In this document: positions 17,845-61,327 of the stretch, piece by piece | How positions within the stretch are numbered: the stretch's first letter is position 1 | How the letters are laid out: every line of letters starts with the position of its first letter | NCBI RefSeq assembly: GCF_030144855.1 | Contig: NC_082714.1 | Span: 31,682,001-31,746,000, forward strand | DNA: 64,000 bases | Origin: Hypanus sabinus | Taxonomy: Eukaryota | Direction: 5' to 3' | Translations under genes and position numbers: made by a program | The notes under the pieces: model-generated | Told to the model about the DNA's origin: nothing | What the model saw: only the letters and a program-made list of their open reading frames with translations | The model's database searches: none

Positions 17845-19330
17845 CACTAAGGTCTTTAACCTTTCACTTCAGCAGTGTGTGGTACCCACCTGCTTCAAGC
17901 AGACTTCAGTTATACCAGTGCCCAAGAAGAGTGTGGTAACCTATCACAATGACTACCACCCAGTTGCACTTCCATCTACAGTAACAAAGTGTTTTGAGAG
18001 GTTGGTGATGAAACATGTCCACTCCTGCCTGAGAGGCGACTTAGATTCGCTCCAGGTTGCCTATCAGAGCAACAGATACACAGCAGATACCATCCCATTG
18101 GCTCTTCAATCAACCCTGGAACATCAGAACAGCAACGATGCATAAATCAGCATGCTTGTTATCAACTACAACTCAACATTCAATGCCATCATCCTCTCAA
18201 AACTAATCAATAAGCTCCAAAACTTTGTCCTCAATACCTCCTTGTACAACTAGATCCTGGATTTCCTCACTTGTAGAAACCAGTCAATTCGGATTGGCAA
18301 CAACATCTTCTCCATGATCCCCATCAGCACAGCTGTACCATAGGGCTGTGTGCTTAGCCCCTGCTCTACTCACATTACACCTAAGCCTGAGTGGCTAAGT
18401 ACAGCTCTAATACCTTACTCAAGTTTGATGATGACACCACTGTTGTGGGCTGAATCAAAGGTGGTGATCAATCAGCTTATAGGAGGGAGGTTGAAAATTT
18501 GGTTGAGTGGCGTCATAACAACAACCTCTCACTCAATGTCAACAAGACCAAGGAACTGATTATAGACTTCACGAGAGGGAGACCGGAGGTTTATGAGCCA
18601 GTCCTCTTCTGAGGATCAGAGATGGAGAGGGTTAGCAGCTTCAAATTTCTCGGTGTTACTATTTCCAAAGATCTGTATCCATCATATAAATATAATTGCA
18701 AGAAAGCACAGCAGCACTTCTACTTCCTAAGGAGTTTGTCGAGATTCGGTATGACATTTAAAACTTTGACAACCTTCTATAGATGTACATATAGTGTAGA
18801 GTATATTGACTGGTTGCATCATGACCTGGTATGGGAACACCAATGCATTTGAATGGAAAATCCTACTAAAGGTAGGATTCAGCCCAGTACATCACGGTAA
18901 ATCTCCCAACCATTGAGTACATCTACATGAAATGCTGTCGAAGGAAAATAGCATCCATCAGCGAAGATTCCCACCACCCGGGTCATGCTCTCTTCTCACT
19001 GCTTCCATCAGATAGAAGGTACAAAAAGTTTAGGACTTGCACCACCAGGTTCAAGAACAGTTACTACCCCTCAACCATTGGGCTCTTGAATAAAGGGGAT
19101 ACCTATAATCACTTGCCCCATCACAGAAATGTTCCCACAACCAATGATCTCACTTTAAGGACTCTTCATCTCATGTTCCCGTTATTTATTTTTGCATTTG
19201 CACAGTTTGTTGTTTTCTGCACTCTATTGATCCTGTTAACATATTCTGCAAATTTGCTGAGTATGCCCACAAGAAAATGAGTATCAAGACTGCATATGGT
19301 GACATATATGTACTTTGATAATAAAATTTA
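17845..19330 (+). mobile_element. Rex1/Babar LINE, RT and 3' UTR
   Basis: VPTCFKQTSVIPVPKK, ERVSSFKFLGV, LLPSDRRY...TTRFKNSYYP; 3' AATAAA and tail near 19320. Confidence 0.88.
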
Positions 19331-21255: not shown

Positions 21256-21539
21256 GTCTGTGATACCGGGGTCCAGCGGGTGGCGGCCTCCGGGTGCAGG
21301 CCGGAATTAACTGGACCGGTACCAAATATTGGAGGGAAATTAGGAATTGCAAGCTCGGCCCCCGTTCTTCGCTTGCCCGGTACCAGGGCACCAGGGATTA
21401 CTTTAATGCTCTCTGCCTACCTGGCATCAGTGGACTGCCTGGTATTATTACTAGCGGCAATGAAGTGCCAGTATCCTCTCTGGTATCACCACAGTGCTCT
21501 TACCCTACCCAACATCTCCACAGTTTGTACCATACATAA

Positions 21540-21716
21540 ACGAGAAAATCTGCAGATGCTGGAAATCCAAAGCAACACACAAAACGCTGGACGAACTCGC
21601 AGGCCCGGCAACATCCATGGAAAAGAGCAAACTGTTGACGCCTCCGACCGAAACCCTTAGTCAGGACTGCTCTTTTCCATGGATGCTGCCTGGCCTGCTG
21701 AGTTCCTCCAGTGTTT
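21540..21716. mobile_element. Palindromic Penelope-derived non-autonomous element, degenerate hammerhead
   Basis: AAAATCTGCAGATGCTGG...GAAACCCTTAGTCAGGACTG followed by an inverted partial copy; same family as 42850-43084. Confidence 0.7.
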
Positions 21717-40697: not shown

Positions 40698-41908
40698 ACA
40701 TCCTCTAAAGCCCCTTATCACTGCTAACTTATGGTAAACCTCCCTTGTTTTAAACCCCTAACTTCTTAACCTACATCTAGAATTCTCCACGGTACTCCAG
40801 CTAAAGCCTAAGCAGCAATTTACAAAGTTCTAGTCTGACTTCTTAGTTTTCTATTCTGTACATCTATAAACCAAAGTAACCTATCCAGTGCCTACATTAA
40901 AGTTGTTTGCATACACACCAAGCTCACCCTTGCCAGTACTTTTTAAAAATCATGCCATTTGTATTGTGCTGAATTTCCATAGTTGGCCTCCAAAAAGACA
41001 CACTGTACACTTCTTTGCATCGATAACCATCTTTCATGCTTGTAACTATGTACTACAGTTAGAGAACCTAAACTTAAAATGGTCTGTTGTCTGAGTTCAT
41101 CTCTACCTACTAATTTTTAAGAAGCATTTGATCATCCATTTTTTAAGTAACATTTTAGTTTTACCATTCATGACCAGAGTATAGAAAATGCATGTGAACA
41201 TGTGAATTGGGTGCAGAAGTAGGCACTTGGCCTCTCAAGCTTGTTCCTCCATCCAAAAAGGTCATTGCTGATCTGAATATAACCTCATCCACTCTAATGG
41301 TATTCCAGAAAGCCTTTTGCTCCTTCACATCTAAAGTGCATGCTTAACTACACAGCTCTAGTTAGGTTACACATCTTTCAGTTTTCCATGTCCACATGCA
41401 CTCTTTGAACTTAGCATTCTGTGCTAGTCACAGCACTCAGCTAGTCCTCTGCACAATTCTATTTGTACAAAGGGGCCTCTAACCTCTCCTCAGGACTATT
41501 TCTTAAATGTGACTGAGGGCAGGAAATCAGTGGTATGGCAGATTGAAGTTCTTCATTTAATTTGTAGAATATCCCTGTATTGCTACTAATTAATCATTTC
41601 TTGGTGTACTTTGCCAAGCCCTAATGAGCTATATGTTATTAACCTACTCCTATGGATCCTTTTGTGATCAGCAGTTTATCAGAGTAGTTTTCACCCCTCA
41701 TGGCTTCAAAATGTGGTAAATTCAGTCAATACACATAGCTTGATTGGCAAGACCTAAGATGTGACATAACTCCAGAAAGCTTGAATGTACTTTTTAATTC
41801 CCATTTCTTAATGTAGGATTATTTATAATTAACGAATTGCTTCAGGGAAGGTTTTCCCTTTCATTTCCGTTTTGGATCCCTTACCTTCTTAAACCATTTA
41901 TCTTGCAG

Positions 41909-42075
41909 ATCATGCTCGGCAAATAACCAAGACCATGATGCGGAAACCAATACTTGAACGACTTTTGACTCAAAGGGAAGCAGATATACAAAATTTTGTC
42001 AATTTTATCAGTAAAGATTCTATTCAGAAGTCTCTTGAGATGTACATGGAGATGCTGAAACAAAGAAAAAGCTGA
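41909..42075 (+). CDS. ECI1: ECI1 exon 7 (stop)
   Basis: DHARQITKTMMRKPILERLLTQREADIQNFVNFISKDSIQKSLEMYMEMLKQRKS*; total CDS 921 nt = 306 aa. Confidence 0.97.
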
Positions 42076-42326
42076 ATAACTGTGTTCTTAAACAAGGTGG
42101 CAAAAACTCTCTGAATATCTAATTGTATTTTTCTGTATTTGACCATTCCATTCTGTAATTTCATCAATGAAAATTTGCATCTTTTCCAAAATGAAAGACA
42201 AATGGAAATTTGTGTCTAGACCCTTTACGTTTTAAAATGTGAAAGTGCCTAATTCTGCTGCTAACAGTCTCCTGATCGTGCAGTTTACTCAAGAAGCTTG
42301 TTGAATGCCTGAGTAGCCTAATAGTA

Positions 42327-42332
42327 ATTAAA
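42327..42332 (+). terminator. Candidate ECI1 polyadenylation signal (ATTAAA variant)
   Basis: About 250 nt after the stop and followed by GT/T-rich sequence; the next AATAAA noted is at ~42775 inside a LINE. Confidence 0.4.
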
Positions 42333-42849
42333 ACAATATCTTTCAGTGTAATGTTTACTTATTTGGTTGAATCTTTACAAAACAAGTCCGGGAGTTTTGG
42401 GAATTCAGAATTTAATTTTTGTAGGAACGCTGAACTATTTTTTATTTTCAGAAGAGATTTTTTAAAAGATGCCAATTTCAAGTGAAAAAGTAATTTGTAG
42501 GAAATTGGCAAAGATGTGGAATCAAGTTTACAAAATAACTTGCAGTTGGGGATAGAATTAATCTTTATACAAACTGGTTTTCTCGGTGATCTTAACACAG
42601 TTTTAGTTAAGTGAAAGATAGCCAGTAAACCGATGGTTAAAATCAACTTCTCATTGTGAGGCATCTGGTCTTCCAGACTCAGAATTAGGTTTATTATCAT
42701 TGCTTATATGATGTGAATTGGTTGTTTTGTGGCAGCAATACAGTGTAAAGGCATAAAACTCCTATGAACTAAAAAATAAATAGTGCAAAAAAAGGAATAA
42801 TGAGGTAATGCTTTCATACGCTGTTCAGAAAACTAATGGCAGATGAGAA

Positions 42850-43084
42850 TTTAAAGAGCAAGAACGAGGAAATCTGCAGATGCTGGAAATTCAAACAACA
42901 CACACAAAATGCTGGTGGAACACAGCAGGCCAGGCAGCATCTAGAAGGTAGAAGCACTGTCGACGTTTCGGGCTGAGACCCTTTGACAAGTCCTGACGAA
43001 GGGTCTCGGCCCGAAATGTAGACAGTGATTCTACCTTGTAGATGCTGCCTGGCCTGCTGTGTTCCACCAGCATTTTGTGTGTGT
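42850..43084. mobile_element. Head-to-head Penelope-derived element with hammerhead motifs
   Basis: Arms ~42896-42984 and 42999-43086 are inverted copies; 13-bp TSD TGGCAGATGAGAA at 42837-42849 and 43085-43097. Confidence 0.85.
42990..43023 (+). ncRNA. Minimal type I hammerhead ribozyme motif
   Basis: gtc CTGACGA A GGG TCTCGG CCC GAAA TG TA gac: catalytic core, 3-bp stem II, stem III reduced to AUGU, UA cleavage triplet end, short stem I; activity untested. Confidence 0.7.
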
Positions 43085-43689
43085 TGGCAGATGAGAAGCT
43101 GTTCCTGAATCATTGAGTGTAGATCTTCCAGCTCCTCTATAATGGTAGTAATGAAAAGAGGACATACCCCAGATAGTAAGAATCCTCAAAGATAGATTCC
43201 ACTTTCTTCAGGCACTACCTGCTGTAGATGTCCTCAACGGTAGGAAGGGTTGTGCCCTCGATGGAGCTGGCTGAGTCTATGCAGCTTGTTGGAACCCTAT
43301 ACGTTGGAGGCTCCATATAAGGTGGTGATGCAACCGGTCAGAATGCTCACCATTGTCCTGCGGGGGTCCAGGCTGTGTTGGAGGCTGGACCGTCCTGTCA
43401 GTGGTTCCCTCTAGTGTTCACTTGGAGCAGGACAAGCTGGATTCCTTTTCTCAGTTGCTGCACTGGTGTGTGAATGTGGCTCCAGGACCAACATCCCGTG
43501 CCATCATACAGGCCACGACACTCAGGAACTTGGGCTATATTATTATTTTTTGTGACTGTATGTTTTTCTGCTGCCATAATTATATTGCTGTGTATGACTG
43601 TTGGTATTGTGCTTTGCATCTTGGCCCTGGAGGAACGCTGTTTCGTTTGGCTGTATTCACGTGTATAGTTGAATGACATTGCTATTCTA

Positions 43690-43918
43690 GCACAGGGTAT
43701 CGGAGTTCAGAGTTCAATCACGGCGTCCTCCATACGTCCTCCCATGGAATGCGTGGGTTTCCTCTGCGGGTTTCAGTATCCTCATACTGGGTAGTAGGTT
43801 TAATTGGTCAGTGTAAATTGTCCCATGATTAAGACAGGGTTAAATCTGGGAGTTGCTGGCAGTGCAGCTCAAAGAGCCAGAAGGGCTTATTCTGCACTAT
43901 ATCTCTAAATAAATAAAA
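43690..43918 (+). mobile_element. HE1-like V-SINE (mirror copy 50244-50472)
   Basis: B-box-like GAGTTCAATC, GCGTGGGTTTCCTC core, GGTTTAATTGGTCA.TGTAAATTGTCC, (TAAA)n tail. Confidence 0.75.
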
Positions 43919-44221
43919 ACAGTAAAATAAATAAATTCCATTATAGGTAATCAAGCCAAAAGGTTTAGGATTGGTAATCTTAATTATAGAAGTTCAATGG
44001 TATTTAGCATCATGAATCAGAATATATAATGAAATCTACATCAAAATATTCGTAGTCTGAAACTCACGTTAATGTTAGAAAAAGTAGCTTTTAGACCTTT
44101 GTAGTCTTCAATGGATTTAATGTTGGAAACAGATTTGGATTGAGCAGACTGTTAGCATGTGAGATGGAATTAATAAAGTTCAAAGTTTTAAGTAAATTTG
44201 TTATCAAAGTGTGTACCATGC

Positions 44222-44415
44222 AGGGGAGAACCGTAACCGCATGGGTTTCCTCCGTGTACTCCTGTTTCCTCCCACAGTCCAAAGATACATGGGTTGGTAG
44301 GTTAATTGGTCATTGTAAATTGTCCCGTGATTAGGCTCAGATTAAATTGGGGGATTGTTGGGCGCCACGATTCAAAGAGCCAGACGCTCTTATTCGGTAC
44401 TCTATCTCAGTAAGT
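44222..44415 (+). mobile_element. HE1-like V-SINE (mirror copy 49747-49940)
   Basis: GGGTTTCCTCCG.GTACTCC.GTTTCCTCCCACAGTCCAAAGA core. Confidence 0.75.
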
Positions 44416-44419
44416 AAAC

Positions 44420-45860
44420 TGAACTGAAATGACTTTATTTCTTACATCCTTCACATACGTGAGGAGTGGAAATCTTTACATTGCATCTCCGTCTGAATAT
44501 GAAATGTACAAATTATAGTAGTTTGTAATAAATAGTATATACAGTAAAATATACAACAGAACAGTCGATATAGCATAGAAATACAATTACATCAGCATGA
44601 ATTAATCAATCTGATGGCCTGGTGGAAGAAGCTGTCCTGGAGGCTGTTGGTCTTGGCTTTAATGCTGCGGTACAGTTTCCCGGATGGTAGCAGCTGGAAC
44701 AGTTTGTGGTTTGGGTGACTTGGGTCCCCAAAGATCCTTCAGGCCTTTTTTACACACCTGTCTTTGTAAATATCCTGAATAGTGGGAAGTTCACATCCAC
44801 AGCTGTGCTGGGCTGTCCGCATCACTCTCTGCAGAGTCCTGTGATTGAGGGAAGTACAGTTCCCATACCAGGCAGTGATGCAGCCAGTCAGGATGCTCTC
44901 AAGCGAGCCCCTGTCAAAAGTCCATAGGATTTGGAGACTCATGTTGAACTTCTTCAACTGCCTGAGGTGAAATAGGAGCTGTTGTGCTTTTTTCACCACG
45001 CAGCCAGTACTTATAGACCAAGTGAGATCCTCGGTGATGTGTATCACCCTCTCAACCCCAGATCCATTGATGTCAATAGGGTGAGCCTGTCTCCGTTCCT
45101 CCTATAGTCTACAACCAGCTCCTTTGTTTTTGTAACATTGAGGAAGAGGTTGTTTTCTGGTCACTACTGTGTCAGGGTGATGTCTTCTTCTCTGTCGGCT
45201 ACCTCGTTATTACTTGAGATAGGGCCAGTCAATGTGGTAGCATCTGCAAATTTAATTAGCAGATTGGAGCTGTGGGTGGTGACACAGTCATGGGTATACA
45301 GAGAGTAAAAGAGGGGGCTTAGAACACAGCACTGGGAGGCTCCTGTGTTGAGGATCAGAGGGGCAGAGGTGAGAGAGCCCACCCTTACTACCTGCTGGCG
45401 ATCAGACAGGAAGTCCAGGATCCAGCTGCACAAGTCAGGGTGAAGGCCGAGGTCTCTGAGCTTCTTGTCAAGCCTGGAGGGAATTATGGGATTGAATGCT
45501 GAACTGTAGTGCAAGAACAGCATTCTCATGTAAGCATCCCTCCTCTCCTGGTGTGTAAGGGTGGTGTATAGAGCTGTGGCTATTGCGTCATCTGTCAGTC
45601 GGTTGTGTCGGTAGGTGAATTGTAGGGGGTCCAGTGTGGGTGGAAACATGCTGCAGATGTAATCCTTGGCCAGCCCCTCAAAGCATTTACTTATATTGAG
45701 GTAAGTGCGACAGGACGCCACTTGTTCAGACATGTTACCGAGGTGCAGGTCTCTCCTCGGGGGCCCAGTGTTGTCGACATCGAACCGTGTAAGAAAAAGA
45801 TTTAGCTTATCTGGGAGAGAGGGAGCGATATTGGCAGCACTGCTGTGCTTAGCTTGATGT
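44420..45860 (-). mobile_element. Rex1/Babar LINE RT fragment (mirror copy 48302-49742)
   Basis: ORFs 45164-45733 (LDPLQF, YSSAFN, LSPLFYSLYTHDC, KFAD) and 44739-45047. Confidence 0.88.
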
Positions 45861-46963
45861 TAATTTGCTTGCAGGCACCCACAGGAAAAGAAGGCAATAG
45901 AATCTGTGAAAAGCCATACATAACAAAGACCAACAAATATCCAATATGCAAAAGAGGACAAAGCGTGCAAATAATAAAACAGGTAAACAAACCATACTGT
46001 GAACATGAGCTGCGGAGTCTCTGAAAGGGGATCCACAGGCTGTGGAATCAGCTCAGCACTGAGGCGAGTGAAGCCACCCATGCTGGTCCAGGACCTCAGT
46101 GCTTGTAGAATAACAACTGTTCCTAAACCTGGCGGCATGGGACCCAACGCTCCTGCACTTCCTGCCTGACAGTAGTAATGGGAAGACAAGGAGATGGGTC
46201 AAATGCAAGCAGACAGGACAGATTCAGGTGGGAGATCTTGGCTGGCACAGAGCAGTGGGTCAGAACACTGGTTCATTTTCCATTCTTGGGCCTCAATGCC
46301 CTCTTTTCCAGCAATGACTGACCTTTGTCAAAGTGCCACACCTGCATTCCTAAGAATCAAGTTTGCCAAATCCTTCAGGAGATCGTAAAATCACTAGATC
46401 ATTTAGACAGTTCAAAAGTACATTTCTTAAAGGAAAATTATAGGCTGCAGATTGCAGTGAATATAGTTCATATAAATATATTTCATACAATGCCATTGTC
46501 ATAGTAGATAAACCATGATTATCTCCTGCCAACTTTATTTGCTGATGACATCATTGTTTGCTGGCCGAATCAAAGGTGGTGATGAATCAGCCTTTAGGAG
46601 GATGATTGAAAATCTGGCTGAATGATGCCACAACAACAACCTCTCACTCAATGTCAGCAAAACCAAAGAGCTGATTATCGATTACAGGAGGAGGAAGCTG
46701 AAGGTTCATGAGCCAGTCCTCCTCCAGGAATCAGAGGTGGAGAAGGTTAATAATTTTAAATTCCTCAACATTATCATTTCAGAGGATCTGAACTGGGTCC
46801 AGGACATCATTCTGCCATTACAAAGAAGCAGCTCCACTTTCTTAGAAGTTTGAAAAGATTTTGGCATGTCATCTAAAACTTTGACAAACTTCTTTCGATG
46901 TGTGGTGGAGAGTATATTGACTGGTTGCATCATGGCCTGGTTTGGAAACACCAATGCCCTTCA

Positions 46964-47198
46964 GCCTGATGACTGAAGGGAAATAACTGTTCCTGAACCT
47001 GGTGGTGTGGGGTCTGAGGCTCGTGTACCTCCTTCCTGACGGCAGCAGTGAGAAGAGAGTATGGCCTGAATGGTGGGGGTCCTCGATGATGGATGCTGCT
47101 TTCCTAAGATGCCACTCCTCGTAGGTGTGCTCAGTGGTGGGATGGCTTTACCTATGATGGACTGGGCTGTATCTACTACTTTTTGTGGGCTTTTCCAT
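46964..47198 (-). other. Single-copy palindrome spacer (235 bp), part of a Rex1 LINE continuous with the right arm
   Basis: ORF 46961-47296 runs from the right arm through the spacer; colinear with Rex1 copy 18830-19090. Confidence 0.9.
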
Positions 47199-50100
47199 TG
47201 AAGGGCATTGGTGTTTCCAAACCAGGCCATGATGCAACCAGTCAATATACTCTCCACCACACATCGAAAGAAGTTTGTCAAAGTTTTAGATGACATGCCA
47301 AAATCTTTTCAAACTTCTAAGAAAGTGGAGCTGCTTCTTTGTAATGGCAGAATGATGTCCTGGACCCAGTTCAGATCCTCTGAAATGATAATGTTGAGGA
47401 ATTTAAAATTATTAACCTTCTCCACCTCTGATTCCTGGAGGAGGACTGGCTCATGAACCTTCAGCTTCCTCCTCCTGTAATCGATAATCAGCTCTTTGGT
47501 TTTGCTGACATTGAGTGAGAGGTTGTTGTTGTGGCATCATTCAGCCAGATTTTCAATCATCCTCCTAAAGGCTGATTCATCACCACCTTTGATTCGGCCA
47601 GCAAACAATGATGTCATCAGCAAATAAAGTTGGCAGGAGATAATCATGGTTTATCTACTATGACAATGGCATTGTATGAAATATATTTATATGAACTATA
47701 TTCACTGCAATCTGCAGCCTATAATTTTCCTTTAAGAAATGTACTTTTGAACTGTCTAAATGATCTAGTGATTTTACGATCTCCTGAAGGATTTGGCAAA
47801 CTTGATTCTTAGGAATGCAGGTGTGGCACTTTGACAAAGGTCAGTCATTGCTGGAAAAGAGGGCATTGAGGCCCAAGAATGGAAAATGAACCAGTGTTCT
47901 GACCCACTGCTCTGTGCCAGCCAAGATCTCCCACCTGAATCTGTCCTGTCTGCTTGCATTTGACCCATCTCCTTGTCTTCCCATTACTACTGTCAGGCAG
48001 GAAGTGCAGGAGCGTTGGGTCCCATGCCGCCAGGTTTAGGAACAGTTGTTATTCTACAAGCACTGAGGTCCTGGACCAGCATGGGTGGCTTCACTCGCCT
48101 CAGTGCTGAGCTGATTCCACAGCCTGTGGATCCCCTTTCAGAGACTCCGCAGCTCATGTTCACAGTATGGTTTGTTTACCTGTTTTATTATTTGCACGCT
48201 TTGTCCTCTTTTGCATATTGGATATTTGTTGGTCTTTGTTATGTATGGCTTTTCACAGATTCTATTGCCTTCTTTTCCTGTGGGTGCCTGCAAGCAAATT
48301 AACATCAAGCTAAGCACAGCAGTGCTGCCAATATCGCTCCCTCTCTCCCAGATAAGCTAAATCTTTTTCTTACACGGTTCGATGTCGACAACACTGGGCC
48401 CCCGAGGAGAGACCTGCACCTCGGTAACATGTCTGAACAAGTGGCGTCCTGTCGCACTTACCTCAATATAAGTAAATGCTTTGAGGGGCTGGCCAAGGAT
48501 TACATCTGCAGCATGTTTCCACCCACACTGGACCCCCTACAATTCACCTACCGACACAACCGACTGACAGATGACGCAATAGCCACAGCTCTATACACCA
48601 CCCTTACACACCAGGAGAGGAGGGATGCTTACATGAGAATGCTGTTCTTGCACTACAGTTCAGCATTCAATCCCATAATTCCCTCCAGGCTTGACAAGAA
48701 GCTCAGAGACCTCGGCCTTCACCCTGACTTGTGCAGCTGGATCCTGGACTTCCTGTCTGATCGCCAGCAGGTAGTAAGGGTGGGCTCTCCCACCTCTGCC
48801 CCTCTGATCCTCAACACAGGAGCCTCCCAGTGCTGTGTTCTAAGCCCCCTCTTTTACTCTCTGTATACCCATGACTGTGTCACCACCCACAGCTCCAATC
48901 TGCTAATTAAATTTGCAGATGGTACCACATTGACTGGCCCTATCTCAAGTAATAACGAGGTAGCCGACAGAGAAGAAGACATCACCCTGACACAGTAGTG
49001 ACCAGAAAACAACCTCTTCCTCAATGTTACAAAAACAAAGGAGCTGGTTGTAGACTATAGGAGGAACGGAGACAGGCTCACCCTATTGACATCAATGGAT
49101 CTGGGGTTGAGAGGGTGATACACATCACCGAGGATCTCACTTGGTCTATAAGTACTGGCTGCGTGGTGAAAAAAGCACAACAGCTCCTATTTCACCTCAG
49201 GCAGTTGAAGAAGTTCAACATGAGTCTCCAAATCCTATGGACTTTCGACAGGGGCTCGCTTGAGAGCATCCTGACTGGCTGCATCACTGCCTGGTATGGG
49301 AACTGTACTTCCCTCAATCACAGAACTCTGCAGAGAGTGATGCGGACAGCCCAGCACAGCTGTGGATGTGAACTTCCCACTATTCAGGATATTTACAAAG
49401 ACAGGTGTGTAAAAAAGGCCTGAAGGATCTTTGGGGACCCAAGTCACCCAAACCACAAACTGTTCCAGCTGCTACCATCCGGGAAACAGTACCGCAGCAT
49501 TAAAGCCAAGACCAACAGCCTCCAGGACAGCTTCTTTCACCAGGCCATCAGACTGATTAATTCATGCTGATGTAATTGTATTTCTATGCTATATCGACTG
49601 TTCTGTTGTATATTTTATTGTATATACTATTTATTACAAACTACTATAATTTGTACATTTCATATTCAGACGGAGATGCAATGTAAAGATTTCCACTCCT
49701 CACGTATGTGAAGGATGTAAGAAATAAAGTCATTTCAGTTCAGTTTACTTACTGAGATAGAGTACCGAATAAGAGCGTCTGGCTCTTTGAATCGTGGCGC
49801 CCAACAATCCCCCAATTTAATCTGAGCCTAATCACGGGACAATTTACAATGACCAATTAACCTACCAACCCATGTATCTTTGGACTGTGGGAGGAAACAG
49901 GAGTACACGGAGGAAACCCATGCGGTTACGGTTCTCCCCTGCATGGTACACACTTTGATAACAAATTTACTTAAAACTTTGAACTTTATTAATTCCATCT
50001 CACATGCTAACAGTCTGCTCAATCCAAATCTGTTTCCAACATTAAATCTGTTGAAGGCTACAAAGGTCTAAAAGCTACTTTTTCTAACATTGACGTGAGT

Positions 50101-51164
50101 TTCAGACTACGAACATTTTGATGTAGATTTCATTATATATTCTGATTCATGATGCTAAATACCATTGAACTTCTATAATTAAGATTACCAATCCTAAACC
50201 TTTTGGCTTGATTACCTATAATGGAATTTATTTATTTTACTGTTTTTATTTATTTAGAGATACAGTGCAGAATAAGCCCTTCTGGCTCTTTGAGCTGCAC
50301 TGCCAGCAACTCCCAGATTTAACCCTGTCTTAATCATGGGACAATTTACACTGACCAATTAAACCTACTACCCAGTATGAGGATACTGAAACCCCCAGAG
50401 GAAACCCACGCATTCCACGGGAGGACGTACGGAAGACGCCGTGATTGAACTCTGAACTCCGATACCCTGTGCTAGAATAGCAATGTCATTCAACTATACA
50501 CGTGAATACAGCCAAATGAAAAAGCGTTCCTCCAGTGCCAAGATGCAAAGCACAATACCAACAGTCATACACAGCAATATAATTATGGCAGCAGAAAAAC
50601 ATACAGTCACAAAAAATAATAATATAGCCCAAGTTCCTGAGTGTCGCGCCTGTATGATGGCACGGGATGTTGGTCCTGGAGCCACATTCACACACCAGTG
50701 CAGCCACTGAGAAAAGGAATCCAGCTTGTCCTGCTCCAAGTGAACACTAGAGGGAACCACTGACAGGACGGTCCAGCCTCCAACACAGCCTGGACCCCCG
50801 CAGGACAATGGGGAGCATTCTGACCGGTTGCATCACCACCTTATATGGAGCCTCCAACGTATAGGGTTCCAACAAGCTGCATAGACTCAGCCAGCTCCAT
50901 TGAGGGCACAACCCTTCCTACCGTTGAGGACATCTACAGCAGGTAGTGCCTGAAGAAAGTGGAATCTATCTTTGAGGATTCTTACTATCTGGGGTATGTC
51001 CTCTTTTCATTACTACCATTATAGAGTAGCTGGAAGATCTACACTCAATGATTCAGGAACAGCTTCTCATCTGCCAACACACACAAAATGCTGGTGGAAC
51101 ACAGCAGGCCAGGCAGCATCTACAAGGTAGAATCACTGTCTACGTTTCGGGCCGAGACCCTTCG
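47199..51164 (-). repeat. Right arm of 8.2-kb palindrome (3966 bp)
   Basis: Reverse complement of 42997-46963 with about 27 substitutions and one 1-bp indel by manual count. Confidence 0.98.
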
Positions 51165-51192: not shown

Positions 51193-51503
51193 AGGGGTGA
51201 TTAATAAGTTCATGGCCTAAAGTAGAAGATGAGTTATTAACTTCAAACTTTCTGCGTAATCACTCAGAGTTGAACTGCATGTGCACGTAGAGAGCTCGAT
51301 AACTCATCACCGTCTACCTTAGGCCACGAACTTATCAATCACCCATCTGTGGACATTCTCTGGAGGTCCAAGATCCGTATGCTCCATGACCGCTGGACTA
51401 AGTGTGTAAATGTAGAAGGGGACTATGTTGAAAAATAAATGTGCTAGGTTTTCTAAAATAGACGCCTTCCTCCTTAGGCCACGAACTTATCAATCACCCC
51501 TAG
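51193..51503. mobile_element. Non-autonomous mariner derivative with three TIR copies
   Basis: TIR AGGGGTGATT[A/G]ATAAGTTC[A/G]TGGCCTAA at 51193-51220, inverted copies ending at 51344 and 51503 (the latter followed by TA); IRMLHDRWTKCVNVEGDYVEK* (51373-51438) is a mariner transposase C-terminus. Confidence 0.88.
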
Positions 51504-52660: not shown

Positions 52661-53019
52661 TGTATCATTGATTTGCTCCAGGATCTGCAGAATCTCTTGT
52701 GTTTAGACGTTTGACATGATTTCCAAACCACCTGTTTACAAAATTTTCTATCATTCCACTAACTATTTAATCACTATTTCCACCCAGAAACTTTGCTTTA
52801 GAGCGGAGTATGACTCGCTCAGTCTGCAAGCGTTATATTAACATAAAGGCATGGTGCATTGGTTCAAAATAAATAACAATATCCGAAAAGAAACCTCAAC
52901 AATTTGAACTTAACTAAAATGGAAGTATTAAGGTTCACTTGACTGATGTGCTAACAGAAACTTAACATGTAGATAAATAGAGTGTCTGGCATTTAGTAGA
53001 AGCCAGTTCAATGCATGTG

Positions 53020-53460
53020 CGGTTTGGATCCGTGCGGCCGCCGTCCGTCCCATCGGCCTCTGCTGCCGTTGTTGGGAGCGAGTGAGATTCCGGTGTTGGG
53101 TTCCTAGTGGCTGTCGAGATGTGGGGTTGAGCTACCGGTCTGCCCACCTTCGGGATCCCGCCGTGCGCCATCCAGTCTCCCTCTCACCTGCTCCGGGCCG
53201 GAATCGGGTGAGTGCTTCTGCTGAGCGGCGGAAGGTTTGGGCCCCCCTCCCTAGGACTTGCAGCCGTGGAGCGTGGACTGGGCCTCTGTAACAGTTGGGG
53301 ACGGACTGAGAGAGTCAAGGCCTCCATGCTCACGCCCTTTTCTGAAGAGAAGTTGTTTGCAATGGCGTCACGCTGCACACAGCATGTGTCCACAAACAGA
53401 AGGTCGATCGTGACCGAAATGTTTCTGAGGTGAAAAGTCGTGGTTATGACACCTGCGAAT
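53020..53460 (+). promoter_or_regulatory. INTS15: CpG island: probable INTS15 promoter and non-coding first exon (donor CGG|GTGAGT at 53208)
   Basis: Only CpG-dense tract upstream of the INTS15 coding exons; consensus donor; the INTS15 ATG exon begins with an acceptor. Confidence 0.65.
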
Positions 53461-54469
53461 AACGCCTCCACCCTTCTTCCTACAACTTTCTGTCCTCGAT
53501 TTCAAATGACATTGTACTTTTTTCATTTGTTATTAGTCTTGAGCTTATTTTGTTCTAAAGTAGTTTTTGGACACAAACATTTCTGCCTTAGAGTGGAGAT
53601 TATTACCAAGTGAGTCTGCAAACACAAAGGCTTAATATGTTGATTCAAAGCAACACCTCAGCTCTACCAATCATAACTTCTAACTTTATTTTGATGCCCT
53701 GATCTGTGAAGGTGTAAGCTATTCGCAGGCACGGTCAACATTCCTGTTCCATAAGGTTACTTGTTCAGAACATTTTTACGATTAGGAGGTATTTTTCACC
53801 TTTTCAAATCTGAAATAAATATGTTCTTAGTTTAAATGGTATTTGTTTAAAATCTGCTGTGGCGTACAGAATATTATTGCAGGATGCGCCCATTGAGATT
53901 AGGTTAAATAACCAATAAGGAGAAAATAATTACTGTATACTGACTCAGTTTGCAGCTTAAGAGACATCCTTTCAAATGTGCAAGTCCTCACATGCAATTT
54001 GAATAGCTTCCTGTCATTAGTCAAGTTTCATTTTGGTATACATCTGGAAGTTTGTGGATCAGCCTGGCAAAGGTACATAGAAACAAAATATTTTTTGTTT
54101 ATTTGGACACAGAACAAAATTGTTAAGCAGAAAAATGAAGTAATTTCAAAAGGTAAGCTAGAGTATGGTATCTACAAAACCTCCGTCACTGGAATTTGGC
54201 TGCTGTCAGAATAGCCTAGGCAAATAACTACAATGCATGTGTACATGATGGTCTTGTCAGAACTGAACAAATTTGTCAAGGCAACTTACCTTCTTGCTAT
54301 AGCTGTTAATTAATGCATTTTGGAACTTTGTTATAATTTCATGGACAATATTTGTTATTCATTTTTCAGCACTCATGGCTCATCCTTATTTGCCCTCAAG
54401 TACACGGTAGTGAGCTGCCACCTTCATGCACTGTAGTGCTTTTGGTCAAGGTGCTTCCCCAATACAATT

Positions 54470-58489: not shown

Positions 58490-59118
58490 ATCATATTAAA
58501 TATTTAAGCAACCTAGGTACATTGCGCTCTTATCTCAAACTGTCAGGAAAATTGGTTATTAATGCGTAACTGTCAGTGTAACAAAATAAAACAATCGGGC
58601 AGAAGTAGTGGAAGTAGGAAAAATATATTTACACCTTTTACATCAGAATATTTTAAATCATGTGATGTAATTGTTTAGACAAACAAGAATTACAGTGATA
58701 ATATCTTGATAGTTTAGTATTTTATCTGCTAAATGATTGAACTCTAGAAAAAGATTTGATGCTTATTTAAAAGCGCTTGGACATTATATCTACTTATAGA
58801 AAATCTGACAGGTCATGTGGTGCTAGGTTACTTGTGAAAATGATTAGATTAAATTTGTTAAATGTTAAAATGTGTTTTCCATAAAGTGATATTGAACATA
58901 TTTCACAGAAAGGTAGGTTTTATATTAAAGTGACCTTGAGGTAAAATAAAGATTATAGAAATGGCTTGGAATAAACATATTTAAACTTTTGTAGACCCTA
59001 AAATTAAGTTCTAATTTTACTTGTCCTTCTGCAAAATAAGGTGTAAACTACTGAAGTAAATAAAATGAAAATGTCCTGTATTTTATTGCACTGCTAACTT
59101 ATGTGTCTACTGAACAGG

Positions 59119-59310
59119 ATGACTGATATTCGCCATTCCCTTTTGAGGCGAGATGCTTTAAGTGCAGCAAAAGAACTCCTGTATCATTTGGACATATTCT
59201 TCAACAGCCAGCTGCAGAATGTACCTGGTCCACTGGTTGACAAGTCCACCATTGAACTGGTGGAGGAATTTATTTTTCAGCTTCCAAAAGAACGTAATAC
59301 ACAGCCAAAA
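59119..59310 (+). CDS. INTS15: Integrator complex subunit 15 (C7orf26), first coding exon
   Basis: MTDIRHSLLRRDALSAAKELLYHLDIFFNSQLQNVPGPLVDKSTIELVEEFIFQLPKERNTQPK matches the recalled C7orf26 N-terminus; donor GTAAGT. Confidence 0.95.
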
Positions 59311-59374
59311 GTAAGTTAAATAAGTAAACTGTACAAGATAATTTCAAAAGACCTATAATTCAGACCATAATTCA

Positions 59375-60003: not shown

Positions 60004-60754
60004 TTTACAATGGAAGTGCCAACCTGCATTGAAGGGAGCTTTTCCTCTTGTAATGAGGGCTGTATGGTATATGAGATCTGCAAACTTTGGAAATGTACAA
60101 AAACAAATTAGAAATACATGGAAAGAGTGGAATAGTTAAATGTTTCAGGCAGTGCCCTTTTTGAGAATAAGGATGAGGCTTAAAGAATTTGTTCTTTTCA
60201 TGTATGACAGATCTGGAGAATTTACCATGATGGACAGCAAATTTGGGACTTTGGCATAAGCATGTAAGAATGAGGACGTCCCAAATTTCCATTTGATAGG
60301 AAGCATACCTATTTGACTTCTTGATTTTAGTGTGCAGGAATGGAATAAACTTAAGATAATTTTTTCTGATAACACTAAATTAAATTTTTACTGCTTTCTA
60401 GTGTTTTAAACATTTAAAATTTATGTTAGTTTAATTTTCAAATATCTGTGAATATTGTAGACATTCTCCAATATTCAAGCTGTTTGACAGGCTGTTGGGT
60501 TTAGGATGAAATTTGTTGGGCTACCAAAAGCATTTCTGTTATCTGTGCAGAACCTCTGTTGAAGAAGAATTAGCTGGGGGTATCTGCTTAGTAGGGGAAA
60601 AAACTGATGTGAGGGCAGGTGAGTATGCTATTCTTAGTAAGTGTTAGGCCATTAGTTTTCCAATGATATGTATCTTTTTAAAATTTATTTTAATTGTGCT
60701 TTCTTCTGAGAGGTCTATTTCTACTGTGTACTAATTATATTTTTTTATTGTAAG

Positions 60755-60976
60755 CGGTTAAGTTCATTACAGGAGCTACAATTGCTGGAGATCATGTGTA
60801 GTTACTTCCAAGAACAGAGTAAAGATGCAGTTCGACAGATCATCTTCTCTGCACTGTTTGGTCCTCAGGGTAATAAAGCTGATGAAAATAGGCTGGCTAT
60901 GTTGGGAAAACTTGTATCCATGGCAATAGCAATTTGTCGTGTTCCCATTTTGGAATGTACTGCATTATGGTTGCAG
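60755..60976 (+). CDS. INTS15: INTS15 second coding exon
   Basis: RLSSLQELQLLEIMCSYFQEQSKDAVRQIIFSALFGPQGNKADENRLAMLGKLVSMAIAICRVPILECTALWLQ; 222 nt; CAG|GTATGT. Confidence 0.95.
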
Positions 60977-61327
60977 GTATGTTTCACCTAGTGAAAAAGC
61001 AAATTTTAAAGGATATTGTAACATAGATTTTTGTACTATAATAATGAATGGATATTCTAATAAATTGTCACCATCATTTGTATGTTTTTGAGGAGTACAA
61101 GAGATTGGTAATTAAAGTTGCAAAAGAAAATCCTTATGATTATCATGTTTATAAAAGTAATGTTTTATATACATAATTAAAACTTCGCTGTGTTTTACCA
61201 GGTTGCTTGCATGATTTACTGTATCCATTGCCAGTGTTGTATTATTAATTTTTAAATATGGTTAAATCAATCATTTAATGATACTTAACATTAAAAATGT
61301 TTGAAATTACATTGGTTGGATTTGCAG

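What the first reader, a model, noticed from the sequence alone, without database searches (positions are those of the whole stretch)
42997..51164. 8.2-kb giant palindrome between ECI1 and INTS15
Seen: 3967/3966-bp arms at about 99.3% identity by manual count, with only a 235-bp spacer. The content is a patchwork of old LINE/SINE fragments, so this is a duplication of genomic DNA rather than transposon TIRs. Established: long near-perfect inverted repeats with short spacers form hairpins and are unstable in most systems, so persistence between two housekeeping genes is unexpected.
Basis: seen in the sequence. Interest (0 to 1): 0.85.

Follow-up and report, generated by a model that had tools for sequence, protein, structure and literature searches.

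The report
Real 8-kb palindrome beside ECI1
An 8.2-kb stretch just after the ECI1 gene is a 4-kb piece of old transposon-littered DNA copied backwards next to itself; it looks like a genuine inverted duplication kept alike by copying between its two halves, a known kind of structure and not a surprising one.

Summary
The arms are 42997-46963 and 47199-51164 (3967/3966 bp), with 27 substitutions plus 1 indel (99.29% identity) and a 235-bp spacer. All differences lie in the outer 2.4 kb.

It is a duplication of ordinary low-copy DNA, a patchwork of LINE and fold-back element fragments, not a transposon with long terminal repeats.

Sequence footprints:
- The left arm is the original at its outer end. 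A 13-bp target-site duplication brackets a small head-to-head element that spans this boundary.
- The right arm's outer end is a breakpoint that falls at the stem-loop junction of that small hairpin.
- The inner novel junction cuts a LINE and carries a 4-bp inverted microhomology (TTCA/TGAA).

These fit replicative fold-back or template switching.

The differences look biological: 19 transitions to 8 transversions, 9 at CpG, and derived states in both arms. In three related organisms the arm contigs have 1.5-2.1 times the word depth of contigs from the flanks (both flanks in two of them), so the duplication is probably shared and homogenised by gene conversion.

Weak point: no DNA reads of the window's own species were served. 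Its RNA-like runs hold only the left-arm version, so an assembly error is not excluded (about 15%).

A 235-bp spacer greatly lowers hairpin fragility in yeast, so persistence is not unexpected.

First-stage readers had already noted this same stretch. They also noted other inverted duplications in this genome, none checked here.

The parts
42997..46963 (+). Left arm (3967 bp). It is the ancestral copy at its outer end and is transcribed as an ECI1 downstream or read-through region.
   Evidence: A 1235-nt contig of organism A (43059-44293, depth 30) matches it with 0 differences.
46964..47198 (.). Spacer (235 bp), LINE-derived. It is contiguous in the LINE with the right arm (junction 47198|47199). 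The novel junction is 46963|46964. TTCA at 46964-46967 and TGAA at 47195-47198 form a 4-bp inverted microhomology.
   Evidence: Another LINE copy (18424-19084) aligns unbroken over 46963-47624 and continues beyond the point where the palindrome copy stops. Sequence read.
47199..51164 (-). Right arm (3966 bp), the derived inverted copy. Its outer end 51164|51165 is a rearrangement breakpoint.
   Evidence: It carries only one copy (reverse complement, 51064-51076) of the 13-bp target-site duplication and only half of the fold-back element.
45373..46963 (+). Inner zone of the left arm, identical to 47199-48789. This is the homogenised tract next to the centre.
   Evidence: the last difference is at 45372/48790. 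P = 6e-7 for an even spread.
42850..43084 (.). Pre-existing head-to-head fold-back retroelement (two roughly 90-110-bp units) that spans the left boundary of the palindrome. It folds as a DNA hairpin with main stem 42898-42985 / 42997-43084.
   Evidence: Alignment to other copies. Fold energy -108.8 kcal/mol, z = -20. Stem coordinates. The boundary 42996|42997 is the first base of the descending stem.
42837..42849 (+). Left target-site duplication TGGCAGATGAGAA of the fold-back element, lying in the unique left flank.
   Evidence: The 13-mer occurs three times in 64 kb: here, at 43085-43097, and as its reverse complement at 51064-51076.
43085..43097 (+). Right target-site duplication of the fold-back element, lying inside the left arm.
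44742..45733 (-). LINE fragment inside the arm (reverse-transcriptase part and C-terminal part), degenerate.
   Evidence: Pfam RVT_1 E = 1.6e-8 and ALKBH8_N E = 2e-9. ORFs.
41893..42072 (+). Last coding exon of the ECI1-like gene. The stop follows at 42073, and the 3' UTR runs toward the palindrome.
   Evidence: Pfam ECH_1, profile positions 196-245 of 251. An RNA-like contig of depth 131.6 reaches from about 41608 to 42892.
53106..53208 (+). Exon-like transcribed piece in a CpG-rich stretch to the right of the palindrome, possibly a non-coding first exon of INTS15. Its strand was not determined.
   Evidence: X1 contig of depth 96.6. GC is 0.586 at 53000-53499.

Best explanation
This is a genuine inverted segmental duplication (a palindrome with a short spacer) in the intergenic DNA just downstream of ECI1.

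Origin (inferred from sequence footprints). A 3.97-kb stretch of TE-littered DNA was copied in reverse by a replication or repair error with two template switches.
- First switch: a 4-bp inverted microhomology (TTCA/TGAA, 227 bp apart) inside a LINE created the centre and the spacer.
- The copy then ran back along the original arm. It stopped at the stem-loop junction of a pre-existing small hairpin-forming fold-back retroelement.
- Second switch: the new strand joined the present right flank. The 3' tail of the LINE was lost.

Maintenance (inferred). The two arms then mutated independently in a methylated germline. They have been partly re-homogenised by arm-to-arm gene conversion, most recently over the 1.6 kb next to the centre. 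The duplication is probably shared with closely related species, whose arms look near-identical.

It carries no gene and probably has no function. Only the left arm is seen in RNA, as a downstream extension of ECI1 transcription.
For: Structure.

The left arm is ancestral at its outer end. A perfect 13-bp direct target-site duplication (42837-49 and 43085-97) brackets the head-to-head element that spans the boundary. The right arm has only one TSD copy and half of the element.

The outer breakpoint falls on the first base of the hairpin's descending stem.

The inner novel junction cuts a LINE whose other copy continues past that point. The missing tail is in neither flank. TTCA/TGAA sit at the spacer ends. 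Human fold-back inverted duplications have spacers and 2-8 bp of inverted microhomology, and 4-6 bp suffices in yeast (PMC3907307).

The differences look biological. The ratio is 19 transitions to 8 transversions, and 9 are CpG transitions. Of the 11 sites where the related organisms' state was listed, they carry the left-arm state at 7 and the right-arm state at 4. One ancestral CG (44112-13) became TG in the left arm and CA in the right.

Arm divergence in the outer part (1.14%) is more than 10 times the difference between the window and same-species contigs (3 SNPs in about 3.9 kb).

Copy number in relatives: arm contigs against flank contigs give a depth ratio of 1.80 in X20 (P = 0.0006), 1.48 in X19 (P = 0.004) and 2.1 in X22.

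Arm divergence (1.14% outer, 0% inner) is below the 2-2.5% divergence from those relatives, as concerted evolution predicts.

The right flank runs forward into unique DNA and INTS15. A single fold-back read would not give that.
Against: No DNA reads of the window's own species were served. All of its runs behave like RNA (depth 4-131 over 12 kb).

Those runs hold only the left-arm version. Their share of right-arm words is 0.46-0.68, and 0.658 is what a left-arm-only holder would give. So the right arm's own variants have no independent confirmation.

No contig crosses any of the four junctions, because all of them lie in high-copy TEs.

The twofold depth in relatives rests on assembler word depths of a few short contigs, which the tool warns are not copy numbers. 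It also says nothing about orientation.

A 4-bp microhomology has a chance probability of about 1/256, so it is only suggestive.

The centre-weighted identity could also come from one recent repair event, or from consensus polishing.
Confidence: 0.7

Rival explanations
1. Assembly artefact. The genome holds one copy of the arm, and the second inverted copy was created by a chimeric or fold-back long read or by a mis-join of two haplotypes.
For: The right-arm version is absent from every run of the same species that was served. No contig crosses a junction. Fold-back reads exist in long-read data, at about 0.6% of ONT genomic reads (PMC12870357).
Against: The two strands of one molecule would give identical arms apart from random errors. 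Here there are 27 substitutions with a 19:8 ratio, 9 of them at CpG, and derived states in both arms.

Allelic difference seen locally is about 0.08%, against 1.14% between the arms.

The structure needs two switches, and its right flank continues forward to INTS15.

The breakpoints show biological footprints: the TSD logic, the hairpin stem-loop junction and the microhomology.

Relatives show about twofold arm depth. The served same-species runs are RNA-like, so absence of the right arm there may only mean it is not transcribed. HiFi data showed virtually no fold-back reads.
Confidence: 0.15
2. A real palindrome that is young and specific to this species, with no ongoing gene conversion. The outer 2.4 kb were duplicated first. 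The centre was rebuilt later by a single repair event, a second fold-back or a centre-break type repair, which made the inner 1.6 kb identical.
For: The pattern is a sharp step, with zero differences inward of 45372, rather than a smooth gradient. Rearrangements in primate palindromes concentrate around the centre of symmetry (PMC8327919). The polarised sites fit equally well with a single copy in the relatives.
Against: The arm contigs of three relatives have 1.5-2.1 times the flank depth. This argues that the duplication predates the split. In that case arm divergence below species divergence requires homogenisation.
Confidence: 0.1
3. A functional long hairpin-RNA locus. Read-through from ECI1 transcribes both arms, and the resulting 4-kb double-stranded RNA feeds small-RNA silencing of the LINE and Penelope-like families it contains.
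For: The left flank and left arm are transcribed, at depths 131 and 30. The arms are made of TE fragments.
Against: No RNA-like run holds right-arm-specific words. RNA depth falls across the unit, to 6-12 at 47619-48200. Several AATAAA signals lie inside the left arm. No small-RNA data were available.
Confidence: 0.03
4. A large fold-back transposon or composite element whose 4-kb arms are terminal inverted repeats.
For: The overall shape, and the TE content of the arms.
Against: The arms are a mosaic of unrelated, degenerate TE pieces in both orientations. Their non-repetitive parts are at about two copies per genome in relatives. No TSD flanks the unit, and the left boundary lies inside another element's own TSD-bounded insertion.
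Confidence: 0.02

Closest known systems
Sex-chromosome palindromes of primates and mice maintained by arm-to-arm gene conversion (PMC8327919, PMC8600007, bioRxiv 10.1101/800185)
   Same: Inverted arms over 99% identical around a unique spacer. Arm divergence is below between-species divergence. There are signs of the same duplication in related species. Spacer orientation is free to flip by recombination between the arms.
   Different: The arms are 4 kb, not over 10 kb. The unit is apparently autosomal and intergenic between housekeeping genes. The arms hold no genes and no testis gene family. Identity is 99.3% with a centre-weighted step, not a uniform 99.9%.
Fold-back inverted duplications in humans and yeast (PMC3907307)
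   Same: A non-duplicated spacer lies between the direct and the inverted copy. There is a short inverted microhomology (4 bp) at the spacer/inverted-copy junction. Sequence beyond the break was lost.
   Different: The unit is interstitial and small, with a second junction back to forward-oriented DNA. It is not a terminal deletion with megabase duplication after a dicentric intermediate. The spacer (227-235 bp) is shorter than the 766 bp to 70 kb reported.
Replication template switching at inverted repeats (FoSTeS/MMBIR; ODIRA, PMC10766183)
   Same: Both junctions coincide with pre-existing inverted repeats: a 4-bp one and an 88-bp hairpin. The inverted copy lies next to the original.
   Different: ODIRA predicts an inverted triplication. 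Only a duplication is present here.
Long-read fold-back artefacts (PMC12870357)
   Same: Two copies on opposite strands meeting within about 200 bp.
   Different: The arms differ by mutation-like substitutions. The copy has a defined outer end and then continues in unique forward DNA. In the published survey these artefacts are properties of single reads, not of consensus contigs.

Membership tests
Gene-conversion-maintained palindrome (primate/mouse X and Y type) | Two inverted arms with over 99% identity around a unique spacer | tested here: met
   99.29% over 3967 bp, 235-bp spacer.
Gene-conversion-maintained palindrome (primate/mouse X and Y type) | Large arms (over 10 kb by the definition in bioRxiv 10.1101/800185) | tested here: not met
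   The arms are 3.97 kb.
Gene-conversion-maintained palindrome (primate/mouse X and Y type) | Arm-to-arm divergence lower than divergence from the orthologue in a related species (concerted evolution) | tested here: inconclusive
   Arms differ by 1.14% in the outer part and 0% in the inner part, against about 2-2.5% to relatives' contigs. This counts only if the duplication predates the split, which rests on word depth alone.
Gene-conversion-maintained palindrome (primate/mouse X and Y type) | Orthologous palindrome present in related species | tested here: inconclusive
   Arm contigs have 1.5-2.1 times the flank depth in three relatives. Orientation and junctions could not be seen.
Gene-conversion-maintained palindrome (primate/mouse X and Y type) | Protein-coding gene families in the arms | tested here: not met
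   Only degenerate LINE ORFs (RVT_1, ALKBH8_N-like); the other ORFs have no family.
Fold-back / template-switch inverted duplication | Single-copy spacer between the direct and the inverted copy | tested here: met
   Spacer 46964-47198, contiguous with one arm in the LINE.
Fold-back / template-switch inverted duplication | Short inverted (micro)homology at the novel junction | tested here: met
   TTCA at 46964-67 and TGAA at 47195-98. The chance probability is about 1/256.
Fold-back / template-switch inverted duplication | Dicentric intermediate with adjacent terminal deletion or translocation | tested here: not met
   The right flank is forward-oriented and leads to INTS15. Only a local loss of the LINE tail is seen.
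Transposon with long terminal inverted repeats / fold-back transposon | Target-site duplication flanking the whole unit, and multiple genomic copies | tested here: not met
   The flanks at 42996 and 51165 share no repeat. Unique arm segments are at about two copies in relatives.
Long-read fold-back artefact in an assembly | Arms derive from the two strands of one molecule and are identical apart from random errors | tested here: not met
   27 substitutions, 19:8 transitions to transversions, 9 at CpG, derived states in both arms.
Long-read fold-back artefact in an assembly | No independent molecules span both junctions | not testable with these tools
   No DNA reads of the window's species were served. 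Both read-laying runs returned assembled contigs only, and these break in the TEs at all four junctions.

The most novel reading that the evidence does not exclude
A short-spacer autosomal palindrome made purely of dead transposon DNA has been kept for a species-level time span in several related vertebrates. It is kept by centre-initiated arm-to-arm gene conversion, with no gene in the arms for selection to act on. That would mean conversion alone can maintain such structures. Its birth could be read to the base: a template switch ending at the stem-loop junction of a fold-back retroelement hairpin.
Probability: 0.3. Interest if true: 0.55.

Novelty: new member of a known kind. Interest (0 to 1): 0.35.

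Why it matters
If real, the locus is a clean natural example of how an inverted duplication is born. Both breakpoints are readable to the base. One sits at a 4-bp inverted microhomology. The other sits at the stem-loop junction of a small retroelement hairpin, which links dispersed fold-back elements to larger structural change.

It would also show concerted evolution of palindrome arms outside sex chromosomes and without genes in the arms. That bears on whether selection or conversion alone keeps palindromes alike.

It does not open a long-standing question. Inverted repeats of this size, identity and spacer length are known in vertebrate genomes, and a 235-bp spacer is enough to make them tolerable.

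Tried and rejected
- **Junction-spanning evidence.** Both read-laying runs returned only assembled contigs. These break in the high-copy elements at all four junctions, so no junction could be confirmed or refuted.
- **Right arm in independent data.** I looked for it with a right-arm-specific query. Every same-species run held just the share expected from the left arm alone. These runs are RNA-like, so this does not settle the DNA question.
- **More distant relative.** X9 was too diverged to give flank depth.
- **Rfam scan of 41-53 kb**. It gave no hammerhead and only sub-threshold miRNA-family hits, so the hammerhead motif of the small element is not supported by a model.
- **Tandem repeats.** None found.
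- **Missing LINE tail.** I searched both flanks by local alignment and found nothing above shuffled controls.
- **Protein atlas look-up.** A look-up with an INTS15 exon, meant to place the organism, gave nothing usable.
- **Transposon-TIR reading.** Rejected on copy number, mosaic content and lack of a TSD.
- **A "flipped spacer" as a necessity.** Rejected. A direct two-switch template-switch product gives the present orientation without any later inversion.
Full report
**1. The observation**

The repeat finder reports two inverted pairs that together make one palindrome, split by a single indel. A global alignment gives arms 42997-46963 (3967 bp) and 47199-51164 (3966 bp). There are 27 substitutions and a 1-bp indel at 43514, and homology is lost abruptly outside. 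BLAST gives 99.294% identity.

The spacer is 46964-47198 (235 bp). It begins TTCA and ends TGAA, so 4 more bases are inverted-complementary and the unique core is 227 bp.

The window has no N and no other inverted repeat of 250 bp or more. There are no tandem repeats in the region.

**2. What the arms are made of, and where they sit**

- The arms contain a reverse-transcriptase fragment (Pfam RVT_1, 45167-45733, minus strand).
- Next to it is a LINE C-terminal piece (ALKBH8_N-type match, 44742-45047).
- A second LINE fragment lies at the inner end (46538-46963).
- Two copies of a roughly 130-bp repeat are present.
- At the outer end there is a roughly 90-bp unit of a very high-copy element.

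This is a mosaic, not one element.

The last coding exon of an ECH_1-family gene, which I read as ECI1, ends at 42072 on the + strand. INTS15 coding exons lie at 59098-59316 and 60710-60988, also on the + strand. The palindrome therefore starts about 920 bp after the ECI1 stop.

**3. Which junctions are old and which are new**

I number the junctions J1 (42996|42997), J2 (46963|46964), J3 (47198|47199) and J4 (51164|51165).

Inner end:
- Another copy of the same LINE in the window (18424-19084) aligns without a break across the right arm's inner end and the whole spacer (46963-47624).
- That copy then continues where the palindrome copy stops.
- So J3 is original LINE sequence, and J2 is a breakpoint inside the LINE.
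- The LINE's 3' tail is found in neither flank. It was lost.

Outer end:
- The left boundary lies inside a head-to-head pair of the high-copy element (42850-43084).
- This pair is bracketed by a perfect 13-bp direct repeat, TGGCAGATGAGAA, at 42837-42849 and 43085-43097.
- The 13-mer occurs only once more in 64 kb, as the reverse complement in the right arm at 51064-51076.
- So the pair inserted as one unit with a target-site duplication. J1 is original sequence, and J4 is a breakpoint.

An earlier first-reader note had flagged this element and its 13-bp repeat. I checked the repeat and it holds. The hammerhead motif named in that note gets no Rfam support.

**4. The outer breakpoint sits on a hairpin**

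The head-to-head element folds as single-stranded DNA into a long hairpin (-108.8 kcal/mol, z = -20). Its main stem pairs 42898-42985 with 42997-43084 around an 11-nt apical region.

The first base of the palindrome arm, 42997, is the first base of the descending stem. The derived right arm therefore contains the whole half-stem and nothing of the loop.

**5. How it most likely arose (inference)**

The present order is left flank, arm, spacer, inverted arm, right flank, with the spacer attached in LINE order to the inverted arm. This is the direct product of two template switches of a growing strand:
1. After copying the arm, the strand switches through the 4-bp TTCA/TGAA microhomology to the opposite strand 227 bp ahead.
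2. It copies the spacer and the arm backwards.
3. It leaves the template at the hairpin's stem-loop junction.
4. It resumes on the right flank, skipping the LINE tail.

An intrastrand fold-back after a break, followed later by a spacer inversion through recombination between the arms, gives the same sequence.

Supporting literature:
- Spacers plus 2-8 bp of inverted microhomology are the signature of human fold-back inverted duplications. In yeast 4-6 bp suffices (PMC3907307).
- Template switching between leading and lagging strands at short inverted repeats is an established route to inverted copy-number variants (PMC10766183, seen).
- NAHR within one chromatid inverts palindrome spacers, and this is frequent in primate X palindromes (PMC8327919).

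**6. Are the two arms two real DNA copies?**

The 27 substitutions are 19 transitions and 8 transversions. Nine are CpG to TpG or CpA changes.

Contigs from whole-genome-sized runs of three related organisms (B, G, H; about 2-2.5% diverged) let some sites be polarised:
- The relatives carry the left-arm state at seven sites: 43134, 43260, 43515 with its adjoining indel, 43626, 44070, 44105 and 44113.
- They carry the right-arm state at four sites: 43456, 43732, 44048 and 44112.
- At 44112-44113 the relatives have CG, the left arm TG and the right arm CA. That is independent CpG decay in each arm.

Both arms therefore carry their own derived, mutation-like changes. These are not sequencing errors of a read folded on itself.

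They are also unlikely to be two alleles. Contigs of the window's own species differ from the window at 3 sites in about 3.9 kb of arm and flanks (about 0.08%). The arms differ by 1.14% in their outer part.

**7. Copy number in relatives**

Assembler word depth of contigs orthologous to low-copy parts of the arms, compared with the unique flanks:

| Run (organism) | Arm contigs, mean | Flank contigs, mean | Ratio | One-sided Mann-Whitney P |
|---|---|---|---|---|
| X20 (G) | 34.1 (n = 7) | 18.9 (n = 6, both flanks) | 1.80 | 0.0006 |
| X19 (B) | 13.8 (n = 8) | 9.4 (n = 4, both flanks) | 1.48 | 0.004 |
| X22 (H) | 12.5 (n = 6) | 5.8 (n = 1, left flank) | 2.1 | not computed |

At nearly all sites the relatives show one state, so their two copies would be near-identical. 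This suggests that the duplication predates the split of these organisms. It also suggests that the arms are homogenised in each lineage.

In the window's lineage, arm divergence (1.14% outer, 0% inner) is below the species divergence, as concerted evolution predicts.

Caveats: the tool warns that word depth is not copy number, the contigs are short, and orientation is not visible.

**8. The centre-weighted identity**

All 28 differences lie in the outer 2376 bp (P = 6e-7).

The simplest reading is a recent conversion tract of at least 1.6 kb that starts at the centre. A single later repair event at the centre would give the same pattern. Rearrangements in primate palindromes concentrate around the centre of symmetry. 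Consensus polishing could in principle produce this pattern too.

**9. The weak point**

No DNA reads of the window's own species were served. Its runs (X1, X2, X25, X26 and others) have about 0.2 Gb of contigs, and depth varies from 4 to 131 within 12 kb, peaking on exons. They are RNA-like.

They contain a 1235-nt contig identical to the left arm and nothing specific to the right arm. With a right-arm-only query they hold 0.46-0.68 of the words, and 0.658 is the share expected from the left arm alone.

This fits transcription that reads out of ECI1 into the left arm and fades. Depth falls from 131 to 30 to 6-12, and several AATAAA signals lie inside the arm. It also means the right arm has no independent confirmation in this species.

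No contig crosses a junction, because all four junctions lie in high-copy TEs.

A fold-back-read artefact remains possible. It is disfavoured for three reasons:
- the nature of the differences between the arms;
- the need for two switches, given the forward-running right flank;
- the near absence of such reads in HiFi data, against about 0.6% in ONT (PMC12870357).

**10. Is persistence surprising?**

Not much.
- In yeast, an 8-bp spacer is the transition point for MRX/Sae2 attack and strong fork block (PMC8053094).
- Lengthening the spacer from 12 to 200 bp cuts rearrangements about 20-fold (PMC10164571).
- Palindromes with over 99% identical arms persist for more than 25 million years in primates, although small spacers are the less stable ones (PMC8327919).

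**11. Verdict**

- The structure is most likely real (about 0.8).
- It is an inverted segmental duplication born by fold-back or template switching and kept alike by gene conversion.
- It is a new member of a known kind, with unusually legible breakpoints.
- There is no evidence of function and no evidence for a hairpin RNA.
- Other first-reader notes list further inverted duplications and a dispersed family of small fold-back elements with 14-15-bp TSDs in this genome. I did not check those. The family note agrees with what I saw at 42850-43084 and at about 21.5-21.7 kb.

Noticed in passing
window 42837-43097: Head-to-head fold-back retroelement (42850-43084) with a perfect 13-bp target-site duplication. 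Its units match a very high-copy family, with word depth in the millions in whole-genome runs. Another head-to-head pair lies at about 21539-21711. The hammerhead-like core (CTGACGA...GAAAC) gets no Rfam hammerhead hit.
   Followed up: partly
window 51197-51345 and 51472-51499: MITE-like element with roughly 28-bp terminal inverted repeats right after the palindrome, plus an extra solo terminal repeat. Only sub-threshold matches to miRNA precursor families on both strands (E = 0.001-0.05, far below gathering scores).
   Followed up: no
window 41608-44293: RNA-like runs of the same species cover the ECI1 last exon and 3' UTR at depth about 131 and continue into the left arm at depth 30. ECI1 transcripts appear to read into the palindrome. 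AATAAA or ATTAAA signals lie at 42327, 42775, 43908, 43926, 44172, 44341, 44527 and 45973.
   Followed up: partly
window 53000-53500: CpG-rich stretch (GC 0.586) with a short, highly covered RNA contig (53106-53208, depth 96.6) about 6 kb upstream of the first INTS15 coding exon. It may be a non-coding first exon or promoter. The relatives show several small insertions around 53296-53329, and the same-species RNA contig lacks 17 bases within 53179-53995.
   Followed up: no
window 44112-44113 / 50049-50050: An ancestral CpG (CG in three relatives) has decayed to TG in the left arm and to CA in the right arm. This is independent deamination in the two copies.
   Followed up: yes
window 18424-19300: A more complete copy of the LINE that forms the centre of the palindrome, about 75% identical. 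It shows that roughly 200 bp or more of 3' tail are missing at the palindrome.
   Followed up: partly
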